From Thecamonas trahens ATCC 50062 (taxonomy: Eukaryota > Protista > Apusomonadida), in contig NW_013657623.1 in the NCBI RefSeq assembly GCF_000142905.1, positions 13,588 to 24,436 of the forward strand: DNA of 10,849 nucleotides, given 5' to 3'. The position numbers were made by a program, and so were the translations under genes. The notes under the pieces are model-generated. The model made no database searches. It was not told the DNA's origin and saw nothing but the letters and a program-made list of their open reading frames with translations. Positions 1-6,754 of this stretch are shown one piece after another (position 1 is the stretch's first letter; every line of letters begins with the position of its first letter).

Positions 1-1
1 G

Positions 2-1249
2 ACGCTGTCCGATCAGACAACCCTCTTTACTCGCTTCTGCCACGAGCTGGTCGTCGCCACCCTTGTCGCCACCATGCTCGAGCCGACCGTCGGATGCCAC
101 GCCGTCTCGGACGCCGCTCGCTCGAGCGAGACCTTTGCATCGATCATCACTTACTTTGGCACCGATCCCCAGTTTGTCACCCATCTCCGCAGCTACATTC
201 TGCTGCATACCCGGGCTGTTGCCTCGAGCGGCGGCATGCATGACGCATACCGTCGCATTGTCCCCGTCGTCCTCGCGCCGCTCATCTCGCGCCACTCTGA
301 GTTTACCAGCTTCACATCAGAGGCAGCAGCTCGGTTCCGTTCCACTACACTCTGCGAGATGATCCGGCTCATACTATGCCGCAACTTGCACCTCTTCTTC
401 CTTCGCGCCGTCGACAATCGCCAAGGTCGCTCGGCCTTGGAAAAGACGACCATCAAAATGGTCAACGGCTCGAGCGACGACATTGTCGCCGAGATTGACC
501 ATCTCTACATCGAGCTCAGGCACAAGGCCCAAATGCAACCCACCCGGGACCTCCACTGCGGGTACAAAGCGTTCCTGAAGACACCTGGCGGCCGGATGCT
601 CGCACAAGACGACCCAGGGCTGCAGAGCAAGTTCATCGACCCGGAGCAGATGACGACGCTCCTCCTTGCCGCTGGCATCGAGCCGGATCCGCTCACGCTC
701 ATGCATGAGACCGACACCAAGACCAAGCCGCAGATCGAACACGTGTGGCCGATGAACGACTGCGGCTCATGGGATGCTCTCGCTGACCCCATTCCCGACG
801 AGGGCCCCGAGACCTTGCTCCGCTGCCACATCGGCAACCTCACCATTCTCGAGGCCGCCATCAATCGTCGCTGCGGCCGGAAAGCGCCGACCTCCAAGGC
901 CAAGCTGTACGCGCCGGTCCAGAGCTCCAACGGCTCGGCCTTTCCGGCTAACATCACCATTGCTGAACGCCTCTACCGCGGTGCCTGGGGCAAGACGTAC
1001 ATCCGCGAGCGCGGCGCCGCCCTCGTTGCAGAGGTGGAACGTATATGGTCTTTCCAGCGCACACATCTCGAGTATGGCATGATGAGCCACCCTAGCGCCA
1101 ACCCATCCTCATCCTCGGCCTCATCGGCGTCCTTGCTCCCGCCCTCGCCCACGCCACCCCCTCCTTCAACCTCGCTCCCCCCTACTTCCCGTAAGCGCTG
1201 TCGGCAACCCGGCGATTCCACCTCGCCGCGCCCGTCCAAGCGGCGGTGA
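2..1249 (+). CDS. DUF1524 (GmrSD/SspE C-terminal) His-Me finger/HNH endonuclease domain protein; possibly 5'-partial
   Basis: The translation contains QIEHVWP (731-751), HIGNLTILEAAINRR (GNL at 833-841, second Asn at 863-865), KAKLY and WGKTYIRERGAALVAEVERIW (to 1048). This matches the EHIxP...GNLxLL...N...K..Y...W....I.ER...L......IW pattern of DUF1524. The frame has no stop from position 2 (TLSDQTTLFTRFCHELVVATLVAT) to ATG 74, which sits in GCCACCATG, so the true start is 74 or lies upstream of the window. Stop TGA 1247-1249. Confidence 0.8.
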   Translation, partial: TLSDQTTLFTRFCHELVVATLVATMLEPTVGCHAVSDAARSSETFASIITYFGTDPQFVTHLRSYILLHTRAVASSGGMHDAYRRIVPVVLAPLISRHSEFTSFTSEAAARFRSTTLCEMIRLILCRNLHLFFLRAVDNRQGRSALEKTTIKMVNGSSDDIVAEIDHLYIELRHKAQMQPTRDLHCGYKAFLKTPGGRMLAQDDPGLQSKFIDPEQMTTLLLAAGIEPDPLTLMHETDTKTKPQIEHVWPMNDCGSWDALADPIPDEGPETLLRCHIGNLTILEAAINRRCGRKAPTSKAKLYAPVQSSNGSAFPANITIAERLYRGAWGKTYIRERGAALVAEVERIWSFQRTHLEYGMMSHPSANPSSSSASSASLLPPSPTPPPPSTSLPPTSRKRCRQPGDSTSPRPSKRR

Positions 1250-1474: not shown

Positions 1475-4400
1475 ATGGAACGCGTGGACTTGGAGCAGAT
1501 CGTCCGGTGTGCGGTGGTGCCCATGGTGGTGGTCGCTCGGCCACCCATGTCCGCGGCTACCGTGTCACCGAACACTTGGTCACCCGCAGGGCTGGCGAGC
1601 GGGGCGAGTGAGAGCAGCAACAATGGGGAAGCAGACGGCAGCGGCGGCGTGGATGTCCTGCTTGCCAACCAAGAGTTTACCACACTGACAGACAAGGCCG
1701 GAATGGTGGTCCAGGTCGAGGCAGTCGCGGCGTACCTTGCTCAGCACCCCGAGCCGCAGGGCGAGGCCGGGCGGTTGGTGGTCGCATCCGATTTTGGCCC
1801 GGTCTCCTTCTCGGTGATGGCGGTCGAGGCCGAGAAGCTACTGCTGATGGGCTCGTGCACGTACGAGGCGCTGAAGGACGCACCGCTGCTCAACTTTTTC
1901 ACAAAGTCGTTGGACATGCTCTGCCTCGCCGACCAAAAGGGCTACTTTGTGCGGATTAACCCTGTGTGGGCCAGTGTCCTCGGCTACACCGAGGAACAGC
2001 TCTATGCCAACCCGTACATCTCGTTTATCCACCCGGACGATCGGGCGCCAACCATCGAGGCGGCGTCCGGCCTTGCCCATGGCGTGAAGGTTGTCTCGTT
2101 TGTTAATCGCTATCGATGCAAGGACGGGAGCTACCGGACGTTCCGCTGGTCGTCGTCGGCCGATTCAAGGTATCTCTACGCCGTTGCGCGTGACGTCACC
2201 GAGCATTACGAGCGCGAGCAGCAGCTGCGCGAGTCAGAGCAGCACTTGCGCGAAGTGTTGCAGGCGACCGGAAACTCGCACGTGACCACCGACGCTTCCG
2301 GTGTCATCACCTCGTGTAATCCGATGACGCTCCGCCACTTTGGTCGGACCGACGAGAGCGAGATGTGTGGCGAGTTGTTGGGGATCTTTCTGCCGGCCCT
2401 CGGCATTGTCTGGGACGTTGTGCTCGACGCCATGGTATCTAACTCAACCGCCACCTTTGACGCTCTCGTCTCTGCCCAGAGAGACCAGCCCGGGATGAGA
2501 GGCCTCACACTCGAGGTCAAGGACGGAGCGGCAACTGTTCGCAATGTGACCGCCGCCAACGTCGACGACGCACCGGGCCAAATGGTTGATGTCACCATCG
2601 ACAAGACGCTCGCCGGGTTTGGCGTGCTCAACGTGAGCTACTCGGTCGCCATCGTCGACGTCTCGGAGCGGCACCGGGCCAATCTCGAGGCGGCGGCGCG
2701 CCAAAAGACCGAAGAGCTGCTCAAGACCAAGGCACAGTTCCTAGCCAACATGTCGCACGAGCTCCGGACGCCGATGAATGGCATCCTGGGCATGACCTCG
2801 CTTATGCTCTCGAGCTCACTCTCGGAGCGCCAGCGGTCTTACCTGGAAGTCATCCACCGGTCGGCATCGTCGCTGCTTACCATTGTGGAGGACGTGCTCA
2901 CGTTTTCGCGGGCAAACGCCGGCGCGCTCACCCTCGACTATGCGCCATTCTCGCTCCGGACCGCCATCGACGACATTGCGGTCATCATCTCGGCCGGAGT
3001 GCTTTCGTCGAGTGTCGACTTTGTCGTCGACCTCGCGCCCGACTTGCCGGCACGGCTGTTCTCAGATGCTGGCCGCATTCGGCAGGTCGTCATGAACGTC
3101 CTCTCCAACGCCGTCAAGTTTACCTCCAAGGGCACTGTTACACTGCGCCTCTCGAGCGCACCGGTCGACGCGGACTCGATCAACCTGCCCAACTACACAC
3201 CCGCCCATGATGACGACGACTCGGGTGTAGCGTCCGATGCACCGGCGGTGCGGCCGGAGCCGATGCGGCTGGAAATCAAGGTGAGCGACACGGGGCCGGC
3301 ATGTCGCAGACTGTTCTAGAGCGGCTCTTCGTTCCCTTTATGCAGGCGGACACGTCCATCACGCGACAGTACGGTGGGACCGGCCTTGGCCTCGCCATTG
3401 TCAAAGAGATTGTCGACCTTTTTGCCGGCCGCATTAAGGTCGAGTCGCAGGAAGGCTCGGGCACAACCGTCGACATCTCGATGGTTGTCGGCGTCTTGCC
3501 GGGAGAGTCGACGCTCGCCGAGGTCTCCATGCCGGACCTTACACTGCTTCGCAAGCAGAAGATCATGTGTGTCGACGACAACCGGGCCAACCTGCGCGTT
3601 CTCTCGGGCTTCCTCTGCGATCAGGGCCGATGCCCTGACGTGACGCTGCTCGACTCGCCGTTTGAAGCGCTGAAGGCTATCAAGGCTGCAGCACGGACCG
3701 ACTCGCCGTACAAGGTCCTTCTTCTCGACGGACACATGCCACTCTTCTCTGGACCCGAACTTCTTGCAGCTCTCGCCCGCGACAACCATCGCCCGCTCCG
3801 TGACATGTGTGTGGTGCTTTCAGTCTCAGGTGACGTCGGCGACGACTCGCGTGCGCTCATCGACACCGCACTCACCCAGGGCATGTACTTTCACGAGTTT
3901 CCCAAGCCGCTGCAGGCTATCCCCTTTCTCAACGCGCTTGCCACGCTTGTCGGCATGGCGGCAGCTCCAAGCAGCAGCGGAGCAAGCCAGACGCCGGCCT
4001 CGATACTGCTCGGCACTCCAACTCCGGCGGATGCAGCGGATCCTATCCCACTTGGACCGCAAGTCACGCTCCCACGCCGAGCCAAGGTCCTTCCTAACGT
4101 CTCGGTTAGCGAGTCGCCCGAGGAGGCTGACGATGCCGCCGATCGGCTGGGCGACGCCTGCCCAAGCTCAACACCGCCGCTAGTCGTCACATCGCAGCTG
4201 TTTGAGGCGATAGACAAGCTCGGTACCCGAGTGCTTGCCGGCATCAACGTCCTTATCATTCACCCGGATGACGAGATGCTGCTCTCGCTAGAGGCGGCGC
4301 TGGAGGCGGCCGGAACCGGCGCGGTCGACTGCGCGGCCAATACAGCAGCAGGGATCCTGGCGCTTGCGCGACGACCGCCGGCGGCGACGCTCATCCTTAT

Positions 4401-5411
4401 CGATGTCAACGACCCTTCCGCACGGTCGCTGCGCTCGTTGCTGGCGGCGACGCCGATATCCAACGACCAAGCGTACGTCGTGGGCTTGGCGGGCGACGAC
4501 ACGAGTGCGGGCCTGGGCCCGCTCGGCTCACAGGGCTCGCCGTTCCGAGCCATCCTCCAGCAGCCCATCAGCGACGAGGAGCTCGTGGACTCGGCGTACG
4601 ACACCGTTGTTCACTACCACATCTCGTTGCTCTCATCAGCGCTGCAGACGACGGCGCTCTCAGACCTCTCGGTCATGGTGGTTGAGGACCTCGAGGTCAA
4701 TCGCATGGTCCTCACAGCCATCCTCGAGTCGCTCCGCATCGACGCCATTTCGGTTGCGGTCGACGGAGCCGACATGCTGGATAGTCTGGAGGCCGCCGCT
4801 GCTGACGGTGGCAGCGGACTTCCGGACGTCATCCTCCTCGACTGCCACATGCCAGTTATGGACGGCTTCACCGCAAGCCGCAAATGGCGCGCGCGTGAAG
4901 CCGCCGACGGCTCGGGTGCCCGACTTCCGATCTGCGCAGTGACCGCCGACACCGGGCACAGCAGCTGGCGCTCGCGGCCGGCATGGATGCCGTCGCCACC
5001 AAGCCTATCTCGCCGCTCGACATCCGCGCCTTTGTTGTCGCCTTTCTTCCGCGAGTCCTCGACGACTTGCCAGGCCCGACCGAGACATGGGCGCTGCCTC
5101 CAGAGGTTGTCGACATGCTCGAGCTCGTGCTGAGCAACATAACCGGGGTTGTCCGCGCCGAGCTCGACACGGCGGCCACATGCTTGGTGCTCCTTGGTCA
5201 TCGGCGGGTCGCTGGCATGCTGCTGCTCGCCTGGGAAATGGCGAACGGGACGACAACCAACGTCGCTCACTCGTTTGTCACCCGCTACCTCGCCGAGCTC
5301 TCGCAGGCCATCACTGCAGCCGCCGCCTCCCCGGTCGGCCTCATGCCCACCGTTACCACCTCGGGCTCGACCTCTCCCGCCGACTCGCCAGTCACGTCAC
5401 CTTTGCTGTAA
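1475..5411 (+). CDS. Hybrid sensor histidine kinase/response regulator (PAS, PAS, HisKA, HATPase_c, REC, pseudo-REC, REC), interrupted by two apparent frameshifts (~3298 and ~4956)
   Basis: Three overlapping ORFs (1475-3319, 3301-5133, 4983-5411) join into one domain series. PAS/PAC: FFTKSLDMLC...NPVW...LGY...FIHPDD...RYRCKDGSYR...ARDVTE. H-box: FLANMSHELRTPMNGILG (His 2756-2758). N-box: QVVMNVLSNAVKFT. G1 box VSDTGP/GMS is split across frames. F/G2: LFVPFMQAD...GGTGLGLAIV. REC1: VDD...LLDGHMP...KP. REC3 (VED...LLDCHMPVMDG...TAD/AGMDAVATKP) is split across frames. Adding one base at each break gives 3939 nt = 1312 aa plus stop. A pseudogene cannot be excluded. Confidence 0.9.
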
Positions 5412-5500
5412 ATATCGAACGACATCGACATAGCCCCAAGCTGAAGGGGAGGGGGGGAGGGAGGCGGAGTGACAGGTGTGCCTCCGATTTGGACCACCCC

Positions 5501-5641
5501 ACCCTGCCCCACGCCTCCACCCTGCCCCACGCCTCCACCCTGCCCCACGCCTCCACCCTGCCCCACGCCTCCACCCTGCCCCACGCCTCCACCCTGCCCC
5601 ACGCCTCCACCCTGCCCCACGCCTCCACCCTGCCCCACGCC
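5501..5641 (+). repeat. 18-bp perfect minisatellite (ACCCTGCCCCACGCCTCC) x7 plus a 15-nt partial copy
   Basis: Identical units start at 5501, 5519, 5537, 5555, 5573, 5591 and 5609, with a partial unit at 5627. There are no spacers. Confidence 0.97.
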
Positions 5642-5649
5642 CTGTCCAA

Positions 5650-5669
5650 CCCCCCCCCCCCCCCCCCCC
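5650..5669 (+). repeat. C20 homopolymer
   Basis: 20 consecutive C, ending 20 nt upstream of ATG 5690. Confidence 0.9.
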
Positions 5670-5689
5670 AAACCCCCGACAGCCGTGAC

Positions 5690-6754
5690 ATGGCAGCGCA
5701 AGGGTCGCTGCTGGTGGCTCTGCCCGACGAGCTGGTGCACGTCATTGCGTACGGGACGCGCGTCCTGGACGCCCGCGACATCGTGGCTCTTGCTGCGTCA
5801 TGTCGTGCTATGCGCCGCGTCCTTTTGGGCGATCCGCTGTCGGCTGCCGCCGCGCATGCCACGGCTGGCCTTGTGGCGTGTGTGCGGCATCGGCTGTGGG
5901 CTGGCGCCCGGCGCGCTCTTGCTACCCGCGCCCTGCACGCGCCGCCGGTTGTGCCTGACCTGGTTCTCGCCGTCCTCGACAACGGCGAGCCGGAGTCGCC
6001 AGCGTGGGCGGCGCTTGTATGCGCACTGGCGGCGGCGGGCGCATCAGCCGGGCCGTGTCGCGTCCGCCCGCAACTGGAGCGACTGACGCTGCTTGGCACG
6101 ATGCCGATGGCAGCGCTCGTGCTGTCCTACGGCGTGCTCGCACTTGGGCGTCAGCTTGCGGCGTCGAGCGGCCAGGCTGTCCGCAACGCTTGCCTGGTTG
6201 TGGCGTGCGCGCGCGGCGACGCCGAGCTTGTTGCCGAGCTGCGGAGCGGAGCCGATGGAGGGCCGCCAGCAAGTGTGTCGGCGTATGAGCAGGGTGCACT
6301 GCGCGCGGCGTCGATGTGTGGCCACACCCACATTGTGGCGACGCTTCTCGCAGACGCTGACGTTGATCCAACAGAAAAGGGTAGCATGGCTATGCGGCTA
6401 GCGGCCTTGGGGGGCCACGGCACAGTGGTGGCACTTCTGGTCCAGGACGGCCGTGCCGATCCAGGCGTCCACAACAACTATCCAGTGACTGTGGCAAGCG
6501 GGAAGGGATGCAGCGAGGCCGTCGCGGCGCTGATTGCCGACCCGCGGGTTGATCCGAGTGTCCGCTCCAACCGGGCGCTCCGCTCTGCTGCGCGCTATGG
6601 ACATGCGAGTGTGGTGGCGCTCCTGCTCCAGCATCCCAGTGTCGATCCCAGCGCGTACAATTGCGACGCTTATCGAGCTGCAGTTGAGGCGGGACACGAC
6701 GACGTGGCTCATCTTCTGCAGCAAGCGGGTGGGGGGAATGCTGTGGAGCCGTAG
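5690..6754 (+). CDS. F-box and ankyrin-repeat protein (354 aa)
   Basis: The N-terminus LVALPDELVHVI...LDARDIVALAASCRAMRRV matches the F-box pattern (LPxE...L...D+..+...C+.+R.+). C-terminal ankyrin-type repeats such as DPSVRSNRALRSAARYGHASVVALLLQHPSV have an exact 93-nt period (DP codons at 6365, 6458, 6551, 6644). ATG 5690 is chosen over 5087 because the upstream extension overlaps the kinase and runs through the minisatellite. Confidence 0.85.
   Translation: MAAQGSLLVALPDELVHVIAYGTRVLDARDIVALAASCRAMRRVLLGDPLSAAAAHATAGLVACVRHRLWAGARRALATRALHAPPVVPDLVLAVLDNGEPESPAWAALVCALAAAGASAGPCRVRPQLERLTLLGTMPMAALVLSYGVLALGRQLAASSGQAVRNACLVVACARGDAELVAELRSGADGGPPASVSAYEQGALRAASMCGHTHIVATLLADADVDPTEKGSMAMRLAALGGHGTVVALLVQDGRADPGVHNNYPVTVASGKGCSEAVAALIADPRVDPSVRSNRALRSAARYGHASVVALLLQHPSVDPSAYNCDAYRAAVEAGHDDVAHLLQQAGGGNAVEP

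What the first reader, a model, noticed from the sequence alone, without database searches (positions are those of the whole stretch)
2..1249. Bacterial anti-phage-type DUF1524 (GmrSD/SspE) nuclease domain embedded in a eukaryotic chromosome
Seen: an intact-looking His-Me finger (EH at 737-742, GNL at 833-841, second Asn at 863-865) plus the DUF1524 tail, contiguous with eukaryote-type genes (MORN5-like, presequence-bearing AIM24, F-box). Known: DUF1524 is the nuclease module of prokaryotic DUF262-DUF1524 proteins, namely type IV modification-dependent restriction enzymes (GmrSD) and the phosphorothioate-sensing effector SspE. Inference: a horizontally acquired, domesticated restriction-like nuclease that could act against giant-virus or other foreign DNA in a protist. 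No cognate modification genes are visible in the window. The frame is open to the left edge, so a DUF262 NTPase domain may lie just upstream.
Basis: partly seen in the sequence, partly recalled or inferred. Interest (0 to 1): 0.88.

Follow-up and report, generated by a model that had tools for sequence, protein, structure and literature searches.

The report
Divergent GmrSD-type nuclease gene in Thecamonas
A real gene of the protist Thecamonas trahens carries an intact-looking copy of the DUF1524 nuclease domain used by bacterial anti-phage enzymes, but it is already annotated as such, similar eukaryotic cases are published, and any defence role is untested.

Summary
Window 2-1249 (+) is one open frame, and residues 225-343 match Pfam GmrSD_C/DUF1524 above the curated cut-off (E 1.7e-7).

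The window is Thecamonas trahens ATCC 50062, on a 255-kb contig. The gene is already public as AMSG_10084, which UniRef names a [quoted passage not shown].

Contamination is very unlikely:
- Third-codon-position GC (GC3) equals that of the neighbouring host genes.
- The protein ends in a Ser/Pro-rich, NLS-like tail.
- The gene is single-copy.
- Among 1.84 billion representative proteins only one relative reached E <= 0.001 (32% identity).

All detectable relatives are bacterial DUF262-DUF1524 enzymes of about 570-600 aa. Homology covers only the last ~115 residues.

Whether a DUF262 domain lies upstream could not be tested, because the 7.5 kb to the left is withheld. A separate stand-alone DUF262 gene exists on contig C19. 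No DndB or DndE gene was found in the genome.

Eukaryotic GmrSD/DUF1524 homologues were reported in 2015 and 2017, so this is a new member of a known kind. An ancient, host-adapted horizontal transfer is plausible, but no donor can be identified. Anti-viral function, expression and activity remain untested.

The parts
2..1249 (+). Open reading frame of 415 codons plus TGA, open at the left edge of the window. It corresponds to Thecamonas trahens AMSG_10084, whose annotated model is 329 aa.
74..76 (+). ATG used as the start in the public gene model. The 24 in-frame codons before it have coding-like composition (GC1/2/3 = 0.58/0.46/0.79), and the low-confidence model runs a helix across this Met. 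The true start may therefore lie upstream.
2..673 (+). N-terminal region of at least 224 residues. It is predicted all-helical at low confidence and has no detectable homologue or Pfam family. Its size fits the helical part of a GmrSD-type C-terminal domain.
   Evidence: DndI C-terminal domain = residues 239-596 (PMC11662687)
674..1030 (+). Pfam GmrSD_C / DUF1524 match (residues 225-343). The match to the bacterial profile extends over 713-1057.
737..742 (+). E246-H247 in the motif EHVWP, the acidic residue plus general-base His of the His-Me finger. It is equivalent to EHICP in HEC-06 and DHIYP in BrxU.
   Evidence: bioRxiv 10.1101/2024.01.29.577857
833..841 (+). G278-N279-L280, the structural Asn of the HNH motif on the second strand.
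   Evidence: PMC4619093 (GmrD N169)
863..865 (+). N288, the predicted metal-ligand Asn, nine residues after N279 as in GmrD N169/N178. It is equivalent to DndI N541, whose Ala mutant strongly reduces nicking and abolishes defence.
   Evidence: PMC4619093; PMC11662687
1041..1072 (+). 32-nt GT..AG 'intron' of the public model, which would end the protein early at TAG 1093-1095. None of the contigs laid over it shows the joint.
1085..1189 (+). Ser/Pro-rich low-complexity linker, present only if 1041-1072 is not spliced.
1190..1246 (+). Basic tail RKR-x13-KRR, similar to a bipartite nuclear localisation signal. This was read by eye and not tested.

Best explanation
This is a genuine, single-copy nuclear gene of Thecamonas trahens (AMSG_10084). 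Its product ends in a very divergent but intact GmrSD-family DUF1524 His-Me finger (HNH-type) nuclease domain. That domain follows at least 224 residues of unclassified helical sequence. If the doubtful 32-nt intron is not spliced, it is followed by a Ser/Pro linker and an NLS-like basic tail.

Inferred mechanism: a divalent-metal-dependent DNA nickase or endonuclease. H247 would act as general base, E246 and N288 would hold the metal, and N279 would brace the hairpin, as in DndI, SspE, BrxU and HEC-06.

The domain is ultimately of prokaryotic origin. The gene is old or fast-evolving and fully adapted to host composition, so no donor can be named. What controls the nuclease is unresolved: a DUF262 NTPase in the same protein, the separate DUF262 gene on contig C19, or nothing. 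A role in restricting foreign DNA is a reasonable guess, not a result.
For: Domain identity:
- Pfam GmrSD_C is above the cut-off.
- The bacterial profile scores 46.6 bits, E 1e-16.
- BLASTP to P0003 gives E 9e-13.
- PADLOC hits fall on the C-termini of HEC-06, SspE and Orf5.
- All ten invariant columns are kept.

Fold:
- AF2 pLDDT is 68-82 over residues 270-350, with strand-strand-helix around the motif.
- VIA-align ranks SspE CTD (Z 9.2, rmsd 5.2, 131 aligned), DndI (Z 8.6, rmsd 3.5, 115 aligned) and SspE (Z 7.8) above all unrelated helical rows.

Host gene:
- It lies on a 255-kb Thecamonas contig.
- GC3 is 0.76-0.83, against 0.74-0.79 in the two kinase ORFs.
- It is single-copy.
- There is no close relative among 1.84e9 representatives, plasmids, phages or viral contigs.

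The catalytic roles rest on published mutants: HEC-06 E471A/H472A, DndI N541A, and BrxU Asp/His-to-Ala.
Against: - No activity or localisation data exist.
- Transcription is not shown. Only assembled contigs were available, one from a metatranscriptome and one from a library of guessed RNA type, and DNA carry-over cannot be excluded.
- No orthologue was found in any other eukaryote, so purifying selection cannot be measured. Nine strain differences split 4 synonymous to 5 non-synonymous, which is too few to test.
- Foldseek matches were not significant (E >= 0.2).
- The N-terminal 237 residues are unexplained.
- The assembly has homopolymer frameshifts nearby, for example in the kinase at about 3300, so gene limits are uncertain.
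Confidence: 0.72

Rival explanations
1. The window shows only the C-terminal part of a full-length fused DUF262-DUF1524 (GmrSD/DndI/HEC-06-like) enzyme. The NTPase sensor domain, with its DGQQR motif, would lie in the withheld sequence just upstream. NTP hydrolysis would then gate the nuclease as in the bacterial enzymes.
For: - Every detectable relative is a fused 570-650 aa protein with the EH dyad near residue 470-480.
- The frame is open to the edge, and the 24 codons before ATG 74 have coding-like GC3 of 0.79.
- A contig of run X1 continues 238 nt beyond the left edge.
- MAFFT twice places the first 12 residues on the conserved D..F..FE motif that ends DUF262, with 6 of 12 identical to P0003. 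The distance from there to the EH dyad is about 245 residues against about 250 in P0003.
Against: - The public gene model starts at ATG 74 and carries only PF07510.
- The bacterial profile and Pfam detect nothing before residue 225, so the motif resemblance has no statistical support.
- An open run of 24 codons is expected about half the time in DNA of this GC content.
- Language-model look-alikes of the annotated protein are 300-330 aa DUF1524-only proteins (a lead only).
Confidence: 0.35
2. It is a stand-alone GmrD-like nuclease: a helical domain plus DUF1524, starting at or near ATG 74. It works alone, or in trans with the separately encoded DUF262 protein on contig C19, as a split GmrS/GmrD pair.
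For: - The annotated start is at ATG 74.
- The visible frame up to the end of the domain (352 aa) is the size of a whole DndI C-terminal domain (residues 239-596, PMC11662687).
- The Atlas look-alikes are DUF1524-only proteins of the same length.
- The genome holds a DUF262-only gene with FQRRYCW and DGQQR motifs at C19:47235-48860. It covers profile positions 8-135 and 216-258 and lacks DUF1524, so it is complementary to this gene.
- Single-domain homologues exist in bacteria (PMC4619093).
Against: - The two genes lie on different contigs, and nothing shows co-expression or binding.
- No complex prediction was run.
- The original 'two-gene' E. coli GmrS/GmrD was later found to be one fused protein (bioRxiv 10.1101/2024.01.29.577857).
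- The two genes may be independent acquisitions.
Confidence: 0.3
3. It is a decaying relic of an old transfer: an open frame that is no longer expressed or functional.
For: - It is an orphan with no orthologue and extreme divergence.
- Expression is unproven.
- dN/dS from nine differences is about 0.4, which cannot be told apart from neutrality.
- The N-terminal sequence is unclassifiable.
Against: - A 415-codon frame is intact in a 61% GC genome.
- All catalytic and invariant residues are retained.
- GC3 periodicity is host-like along the whole frame.
- Pieces of the gene are present in an RNA library.
Confidence: 0.12
4. It is bacterial contamination, or a chimeric assembly joining prey-bacterium DNA to Thecamonas DNA.
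For: Thecamonas is grown on bacteria. The assembly contains indel errors.
Against: - There is no composition break, and GC3 equals that of the two kinase ORFs.
- The best bacterial match is only 25-38% identical, and only in the core domain.
- The protein has a eukaryote-style Ser/Pro plus basic tail.
- Contigs from three further runs, two of them from one sample, cover parts of the gene. One runs across the left edge, and one reaches 1402, past the stop, with adjacent pieces continuing into the kinase gene.
Confidence: 0.03

Closest known systems
P0003/P0002-type DUF262-DUF1524 proteins encoded beside dnd phosphorothioation genes, and DndI (PDB 9JFL)
   Same: These are the closest sequence relatives: P0002 at E 2.8e-4 over the whole library, and pairwise E 9e-13 at 30% identity over 112 residues. 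The shared motifs are EH..P, GN.T.L, N, GS.FP, AW...I.ER and IWS. DndI is the second-best structural match (Z 8.6). The nuclease Asn corresponding to N288 is needed for full nicking activity and for defence in DndI (PMC11662687).
   Different: Homology is confined to the last ~115 residues. No DUF262 is visible in the window. No DndB or DndE was found in the Thecamonas genome. The host is a eukaryote, and the protein has an added Ser/Pro and basic tail.
SspE (PDB 6JIV, 7DRI), the phosphorothioate-sensing nicking enzyme
   Same: The DUF1524 C-terminal domain is the best structural match (Z 9.2, 131 residues aligned). PADLOC SspE models hit the same residues.
   Different: PADLOC E-values are weak (5e-6 to 0.06) and identity is 15-19%. 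No Ssp modification genes are visible in the window, and they were not searched for in the genome.
GmrSD, BrxU and HEC-06 type IV restriction or defence enzymes
   Same: The Pfam family and the catalytic motif are the same. The best PADLOC hits are HEC-06 (E 1.3e-7), and EHVWP here corresponds to EHICP in HEC-06 and DHIYP in BrxU (bioRxiv 10.1101/2024.01.29.577857).
   Different: Those enzymes are fused to a DUF262 NTPase through a 200-400 aa helical linker and act on modified phage DNA. Here neither the fusion nor any substrate preference is known.
Previously reported eukaryotic DUF1524/GmrSD homologues (Coccomyxa subellipsoidea, Thalassiosira oceanica; fungal secreted DUF1524 proteins)
   Same: A bacterial-type DUF1524 domain is encoded in a eukaryotic genome, with horizontal transfer suggested (PMC4619093, PMC5714182, PMC6453484).
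   Different: This protein shows no detectable closer kinship to any of them, since none reached E <= 0.001 in the exhaustive search. It has no Excalibur domain, and no obvious signal peptide was seen by eye. It comes from a different supergroup (Apusomonadida).

Membership tests
Pfam PF07510 GmrSD_C / DUF1524 (His-Me finger group 3) | Match to the family HMM above the curated gathering score | tested here: met
   31.7 bits against a cut-off of 23, E 1.7e-7. 34.1 bits in the six-frame genome search.
Pfam PF07510 GmrSD_C / DUF1524 (His-Me finger group 3) | Acidic residue plus His dyad, then two Asn nine residues apart (GmrD D113-H114, N169, N178) | tested here: met
   E246-H247, N279 and N288 are invariant in alignments A4 and A5. 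The feature definition comes from PMC4619093.
Pfam PF07510 GmrSD_C / DUF1524 (His-Me finger group 3) | Beta-beta-alpha-metal fold | tested here: inconclusive
   The AF2 models have mean pLDDT 50 and 61, with the core at 68-82 and strand/strand/helix at the motif. VIA-align gives Z 9.2, 8.6 and 7.8 to SspE and DndI. Foldseek gives E >= 0.2.
GmrSD / BrxU / HEC-06 fused type IV restriction enzymes | N-terminal DUF262 (ParB-like NTPase, DGQQR motif) in the same polypeptide | not testable with these tools
   Nothing in the window matches DUF262. The 7,491 nt upstream (C57:6097-13587) are withheld and read N.
GmrSD / BrxU / HEC-06 fused type IV restriction enzymes | Alpha-helical linker of 200-400 residues before DUF1524 | tested here: inconclusive
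   Residues 5-226 are predicted helical, but at pLDDT 30-53. They show no sequence similarity to bacterial linkers.
GmrSD / BrxU / HEC-06 fused type IV restriction enzymes | Cleavage dependent on DNA modification, and protection against viruses | not testable with these tools
   This needs biochemistry and infection assays.
SspE / DndI phosphorothioate-sensing systems | Cognate PT-modification genes (dndBCDE or sspABCD) in the genome | tested here: not met
   No DndB (PF14072) was found, and the control genomes rang for this family. No DndE (PF08870) was found, but that control was silent, so this half is inconclusive. SspABCD was not searched.
Secreted DUF1524 extracellular nucleases (bacterial and fungal) | [quoted passage not shown] | tested here: not met
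   No Excalibur or any other Pfam family was found besides GmrSD_C. The C-terminus is instead Ser/Pro-rich with a basic NLS-like end. No dedicated signal-peptide predictor was run.

The most novel reading that the evidence does not exclude
Thecamonas keeps a domesticated, nucleus-targeted GmrSD-like restriction system. It could be fused (DUF262 just upstream) or split between this gene and the DUF262 gene on C19. It would sit a few kb from a TIR-NB-ARC-WD40 NLR-like gene as part of a eukaryotic 'defence island', and cut modified or foreign DNA such as giant-virus DNA.
Probability: 0.1. Interest if true: 0.75.

Novelty: new member of a known kind. Interest (0 to 1): 0.3.

Why it matters
If the enzyme is active, it would be one more example of a prokaryotic anti-phage nuclease module retained in a deep-branching eukaryote. 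Apusomonads are close to the animal-fungal lineage. It would also be a tractable case for asking how such a module is controlled without its bacterial partners. As it stands it is an annotated orphan with a recognisable domain. It is useful as a catalogue entry and a candidate for biochemical testing, but it does not open a new question.

Tried and rejected
1. Extending leftwards to look for DGQQR. The fetch from genomes returned N for C57:6097-13587, which is withheld. I did not try to obtain it another way.
2. Finding homologues.
   - The word-indexed searches returned only the protein itself.
   - The exhaustive search gave one weak relative.
   - A profile search added two fused bacterial proteins.
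   - A genome-contig scan gave three Hyphomicrobiales loci at 25-27% identity.
   - 301 Pseudomonadota genomes gave only weak core hits.
   - Viral contigs, plasmids and phages gave nothing, and the PDB gave nothing by sequence.
3. NCBIfam gave nothing. PHROGs gave one marginal hit at E 0.022.
4. Homology of the N-terminal 237 residues to bacterial linkers was not detected by BLASTP or by the profile. Atlas look-alikes for that part were heterogeneous.
5. Structure. Both AF2 models have low confidence outside the core. Foldseek was not significant, and only VIA-align separated the SspE and DndI domains from the background.
6. Expression and splicing. All four runs laid were assembled contigs, so transcript ends, strand and level cannot be read. 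No joint was seen at 1041-1072.
7. A dN/dS test from nine strain differences is too small to be informative.
8. A donor phylogeny was not attempted.
The annotated spliced model was used only as returned by the database (P0001).
10. Complex prediction was not used, because I do not claim that the C57 and C19 proteins bind.

Full report
**What is there.**
Window bases 2-1249 on the + strand form one open frame of 415 codons ending in TGA. The frame has no stop back to the left edge. Against Pfam the only match is GmrSD_C (PF07510, formerly DUF1524). It covers residues 225-343 at E 1.7e-7 and 31.7 bits, above the curated cut-off of 23. PADLOC models hit the same residues, always at the extreme C-terminus of HEC-06, SspE and Orf5 (best E 1.3e-7).

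- 737-742 encode E246-H247, in the motif EHVWP.
- 833-841 encode G278-N279-L280.
- 863-865 encode N288.

A profile built from the nine closest bacterial proteins matches residues 238-352 at 46.6 bits, E 1e-16.

**Whose gene it is.**
The window is G000:C57:13588-24436, on a 255-kb contig of a 28.7-Mb assembly. The protein search identifies it as Thecamonas trahens ATCC 50062 AMSG_10084 (XP_013753671.1). UniRef already names it [quoted passage not shown].

Downstream lie a PAS-HisKA-HATPase-REC hybrid kinase, an ankyrin protein, AIM24 and a class I/II aminotransferase.

Several points argue against a bacterial contaminant or a recent transfer:
- There is no composition break.
- Codon-position GC of the frame (GC3 0.76-0.83) matches the two kinase ORFs (0.74-0.79).
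- The gene is single-copy in the genome.
- Contigs of four public runs cover parts of it at 99-100% identity. One runs over the left edge, and another reaches 1402, past the stop codon.
- The protein ends in a Ser/Pro-rich stretch and a basic RKR-x13-KRR tail.

**How far it is from anything else.**
An exhaustive phmmer pass over 1.84 billion representative proteins found only the protein itself and one other sequence at E <= 0.001. That sequence is P0002 (165 aa, 32% identity, E 2.8e-4).
- P0002 lies in prokaryotic metagenome contigs next to a ScoMcrA-like SBD-HNH gene, a cysteine desulfurase, DndE and an SMC-like ATPase.
- P0002 matches the C-terminal end of a 588-aa DUF262-DUF1524 protein, P0003.
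- A genome scan and a sample of 301 Pseudomonadota genomes gave only weak hits (E >= 2.7e-4 per genome). The hits to the DUF1524 core all fell inside 570-650 aa DUF262-DUF1524 reading frames.
- Plasmid, phage and viral-contig collections gave nothing.
- Homology stops at about residue 238. BLASTP, the bacterial profile and Pfam see nothing in the first 237 residues. Language-model look-alikes for that part are heterogeneous.

A prokaryotic origin of the domain is likely, given the family's distribution: 12124 bacterial, 174 archaeal, 28 viral and 263 eukaryotic sequences (PMC5714182). The donor and the date cannot be inferred.

**Fold and mechanism.**
AlphaFold2 with the shallow alignments gave low overall confidence (mean pLDDT 50 and 61). 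The core at residues 270-350 reached 68-82. A strand carries the EH dyad, a second strand carries the residues after N279, and a helix carries N288.
- Foldseek matches were not significant, though the top ranks were BrxU, DndI, the SspE C-terminal domain and other HNH domains.
- VIA-align placed the SspE C-terminal domain (Z 9.2, rmsd 5.2, 131 aligned), DndI (Z 8.6, rmsd 3.5, 115 aligned) and SspE (Z 7.8) above all unrelated helical rows.
- Published mutagenesis fixes the roles of the equivalent residues. E471A and H472A abolish HEC-06 defence, and the equivalent Asp and His mutations abolish BrxU defence (bioRxiv 10.1101/2024.01.29.577857). N541A in DndI corresponds to N288 in the profile alignment. 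It strongly reduces nicking and abolishes defence (PMC11662687). GmrD D113, H114, N169 and N178 were predicted as the catalytic set (PMC4619093).

I therefore infer a metal-dependent DNA nickase or endonuclease, with H247 as general base. This is inference from homology, and nothing here shows activity.

**Gene limits.**
The public model starts at ATG 74. It removes a 32-nt GT..AG "intron" (1041-1072), which shifts the frame and ends the protein at TAG 1093-1095.
- No contig from runs X1, X4 or X5 shows that joint. A metatranscriptome piece starts inside the "intron".
- The assembly has at least one homopolymer frameshift close by, inside the kinase HATPase_c domain at about 3300. Automated models here may therefore patch or truncate frames.
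- I consider the unspliced 391-415 aa reading more likely, which keeps the Ser/Pro linker and the NLS-like tail. Only cDNA can settle it.
- On the 5' side, the 24 codons before ATG 74 have coding-like composition (0.58/0.46/0.79). The low-confidence model runs a helix across the annotated Met. One contig continues 238 nt beyond the window. These are hints, not proof, that the protein begins further upstream.

**DUF262.**
C57:6097-13587, ending exactly at the window's first base, is withheld and reads N. I did not seek it by other routes.

Indirect evidence points both ways. In favour of a fusion:
- Every relative is fused.
- MAFFT twice put the first 12 residues on the conserved D..F..FE motif at the end of DUF262, with matching spacing to the EH dyad.

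Against a fusion:
- That resemblance has no statistical support.
- The public model carries only PF07510.
- The visible frame already equals the size of a whole DndI C-terminal domain (residues 239-596).

The genome does hold a DUF262-only gene on another contig (C19:47235-48860). It has FQRRYCW and DGQQR motifs and no DUF1524. This gene was also noted earlier in the scan. A split GmrS/GmrD arrangement is conceivable but untested.

No DndB was found in the genome. DndE was not found either, but the control search for that family was silent. A complete phosphorothioate-sensing system is therefore not supported.

**Expression and selection.**
All four runs that were laid are assembled contigs. 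One is a metatranscriptome with 100%-identical pieces at 1-265 and 1066-1261. Another is only guessed to be RNA. DNA carry-over cannot be excluded, so transcription is not shown. Nine differences between the window and these contigs split 4 synonymous to 5 non-synonymous. None falls in a catalytic residue, and the count is too small for a test.

**Comparison with what is known, and novelty.**
GmrSD homologues from three eukaryotic organisms were reported in 2015, with Coccomyxa and Thalassiosira sequences in the published alignment (PMC4619093). In 2017, 263 eukaryotic DUF1524 sequences were counted, with possible inter-kingdom transfer noted (PMC5714182). Fungal secreted DUF1524 proteins have also been described (PMC6453484).

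No paper that mentions this Thecamonas gene was found, but databases already label it. It is a new, unusually divergent member of a known kind.

First-stage notes place a TIR-NB-ARC-WD40 NLR-like gene 3.7-8.3 kb upstream. I could not check this. If true, it makes the neighbourhood a little more suggestive of immunity, and that drives the "novel case" below.

I built no spliced or joined sequence. The annotated spliced model was used only as returned by the database.

**Verdict.**
- Interest is modest (0.3).

Noticed in passing
G000:C19:47235-48860 (L005 1363-1959, then a frame change to 2028-2984): A stand-alone DUF262/GmrS-like gene with FQRRYCW and DGQQR motifs (Pfam GmrSD_N, E 2.6e-14). A frame change or short intron lies between its two parts. 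It has no DUF1524, so it is complementary to the nuclease gene in this window.
   Followed up: partly
window 3290-3320: The hybrid histidine kinase (PAS-HisKA-HATPase_c-REC, 1475-5133) changes frame inside HATPase_c, next to a G/C run (acggggccggcatg). One extra G would restore the usual DTGPGM motif. This looks like a homopolymer error in the assembly, or a real frameshift.
   Followed up: partly
window 1041-1072: The public model of AMSG_10084 uses a 32-nt GT..AG intron that truncates the protein. No laid contig shows the joint, so it is likely an annotation artefact.
   Followed up: partly
window 5480-5690: A tandem repeat lies upstream of the ankyrin-repeat ORF. In one frame it encodes about eight copies of PHASTL, and in other frames Pro/Cys/Thr-rich or Pro-rich units.
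   Followed up: no
L006 424-921 and L007 147-644 (metagenome contigs): The closest relative, P0002, is a 165-aa DUF1524-only ORF beside a ScoMcrA-like SBD-HNH gene, dndA-like and dndE genes, and an SMC-like (DndD-like) ATPase gene. It looks like a truncated copy of a 588-aa DUF262-DUF1524 protein (P0003).
   Followed up: partly
window 1-265, 1066-1261, 2414-2592: A 'subsurface metagenome' metatranscriptome (run X2) holds pieces 100% identical to Thecamonas trahens. This suggests the organism, or carry-over of its nucleic acid, in that sample.
   Followed up: no
   Followed up: no
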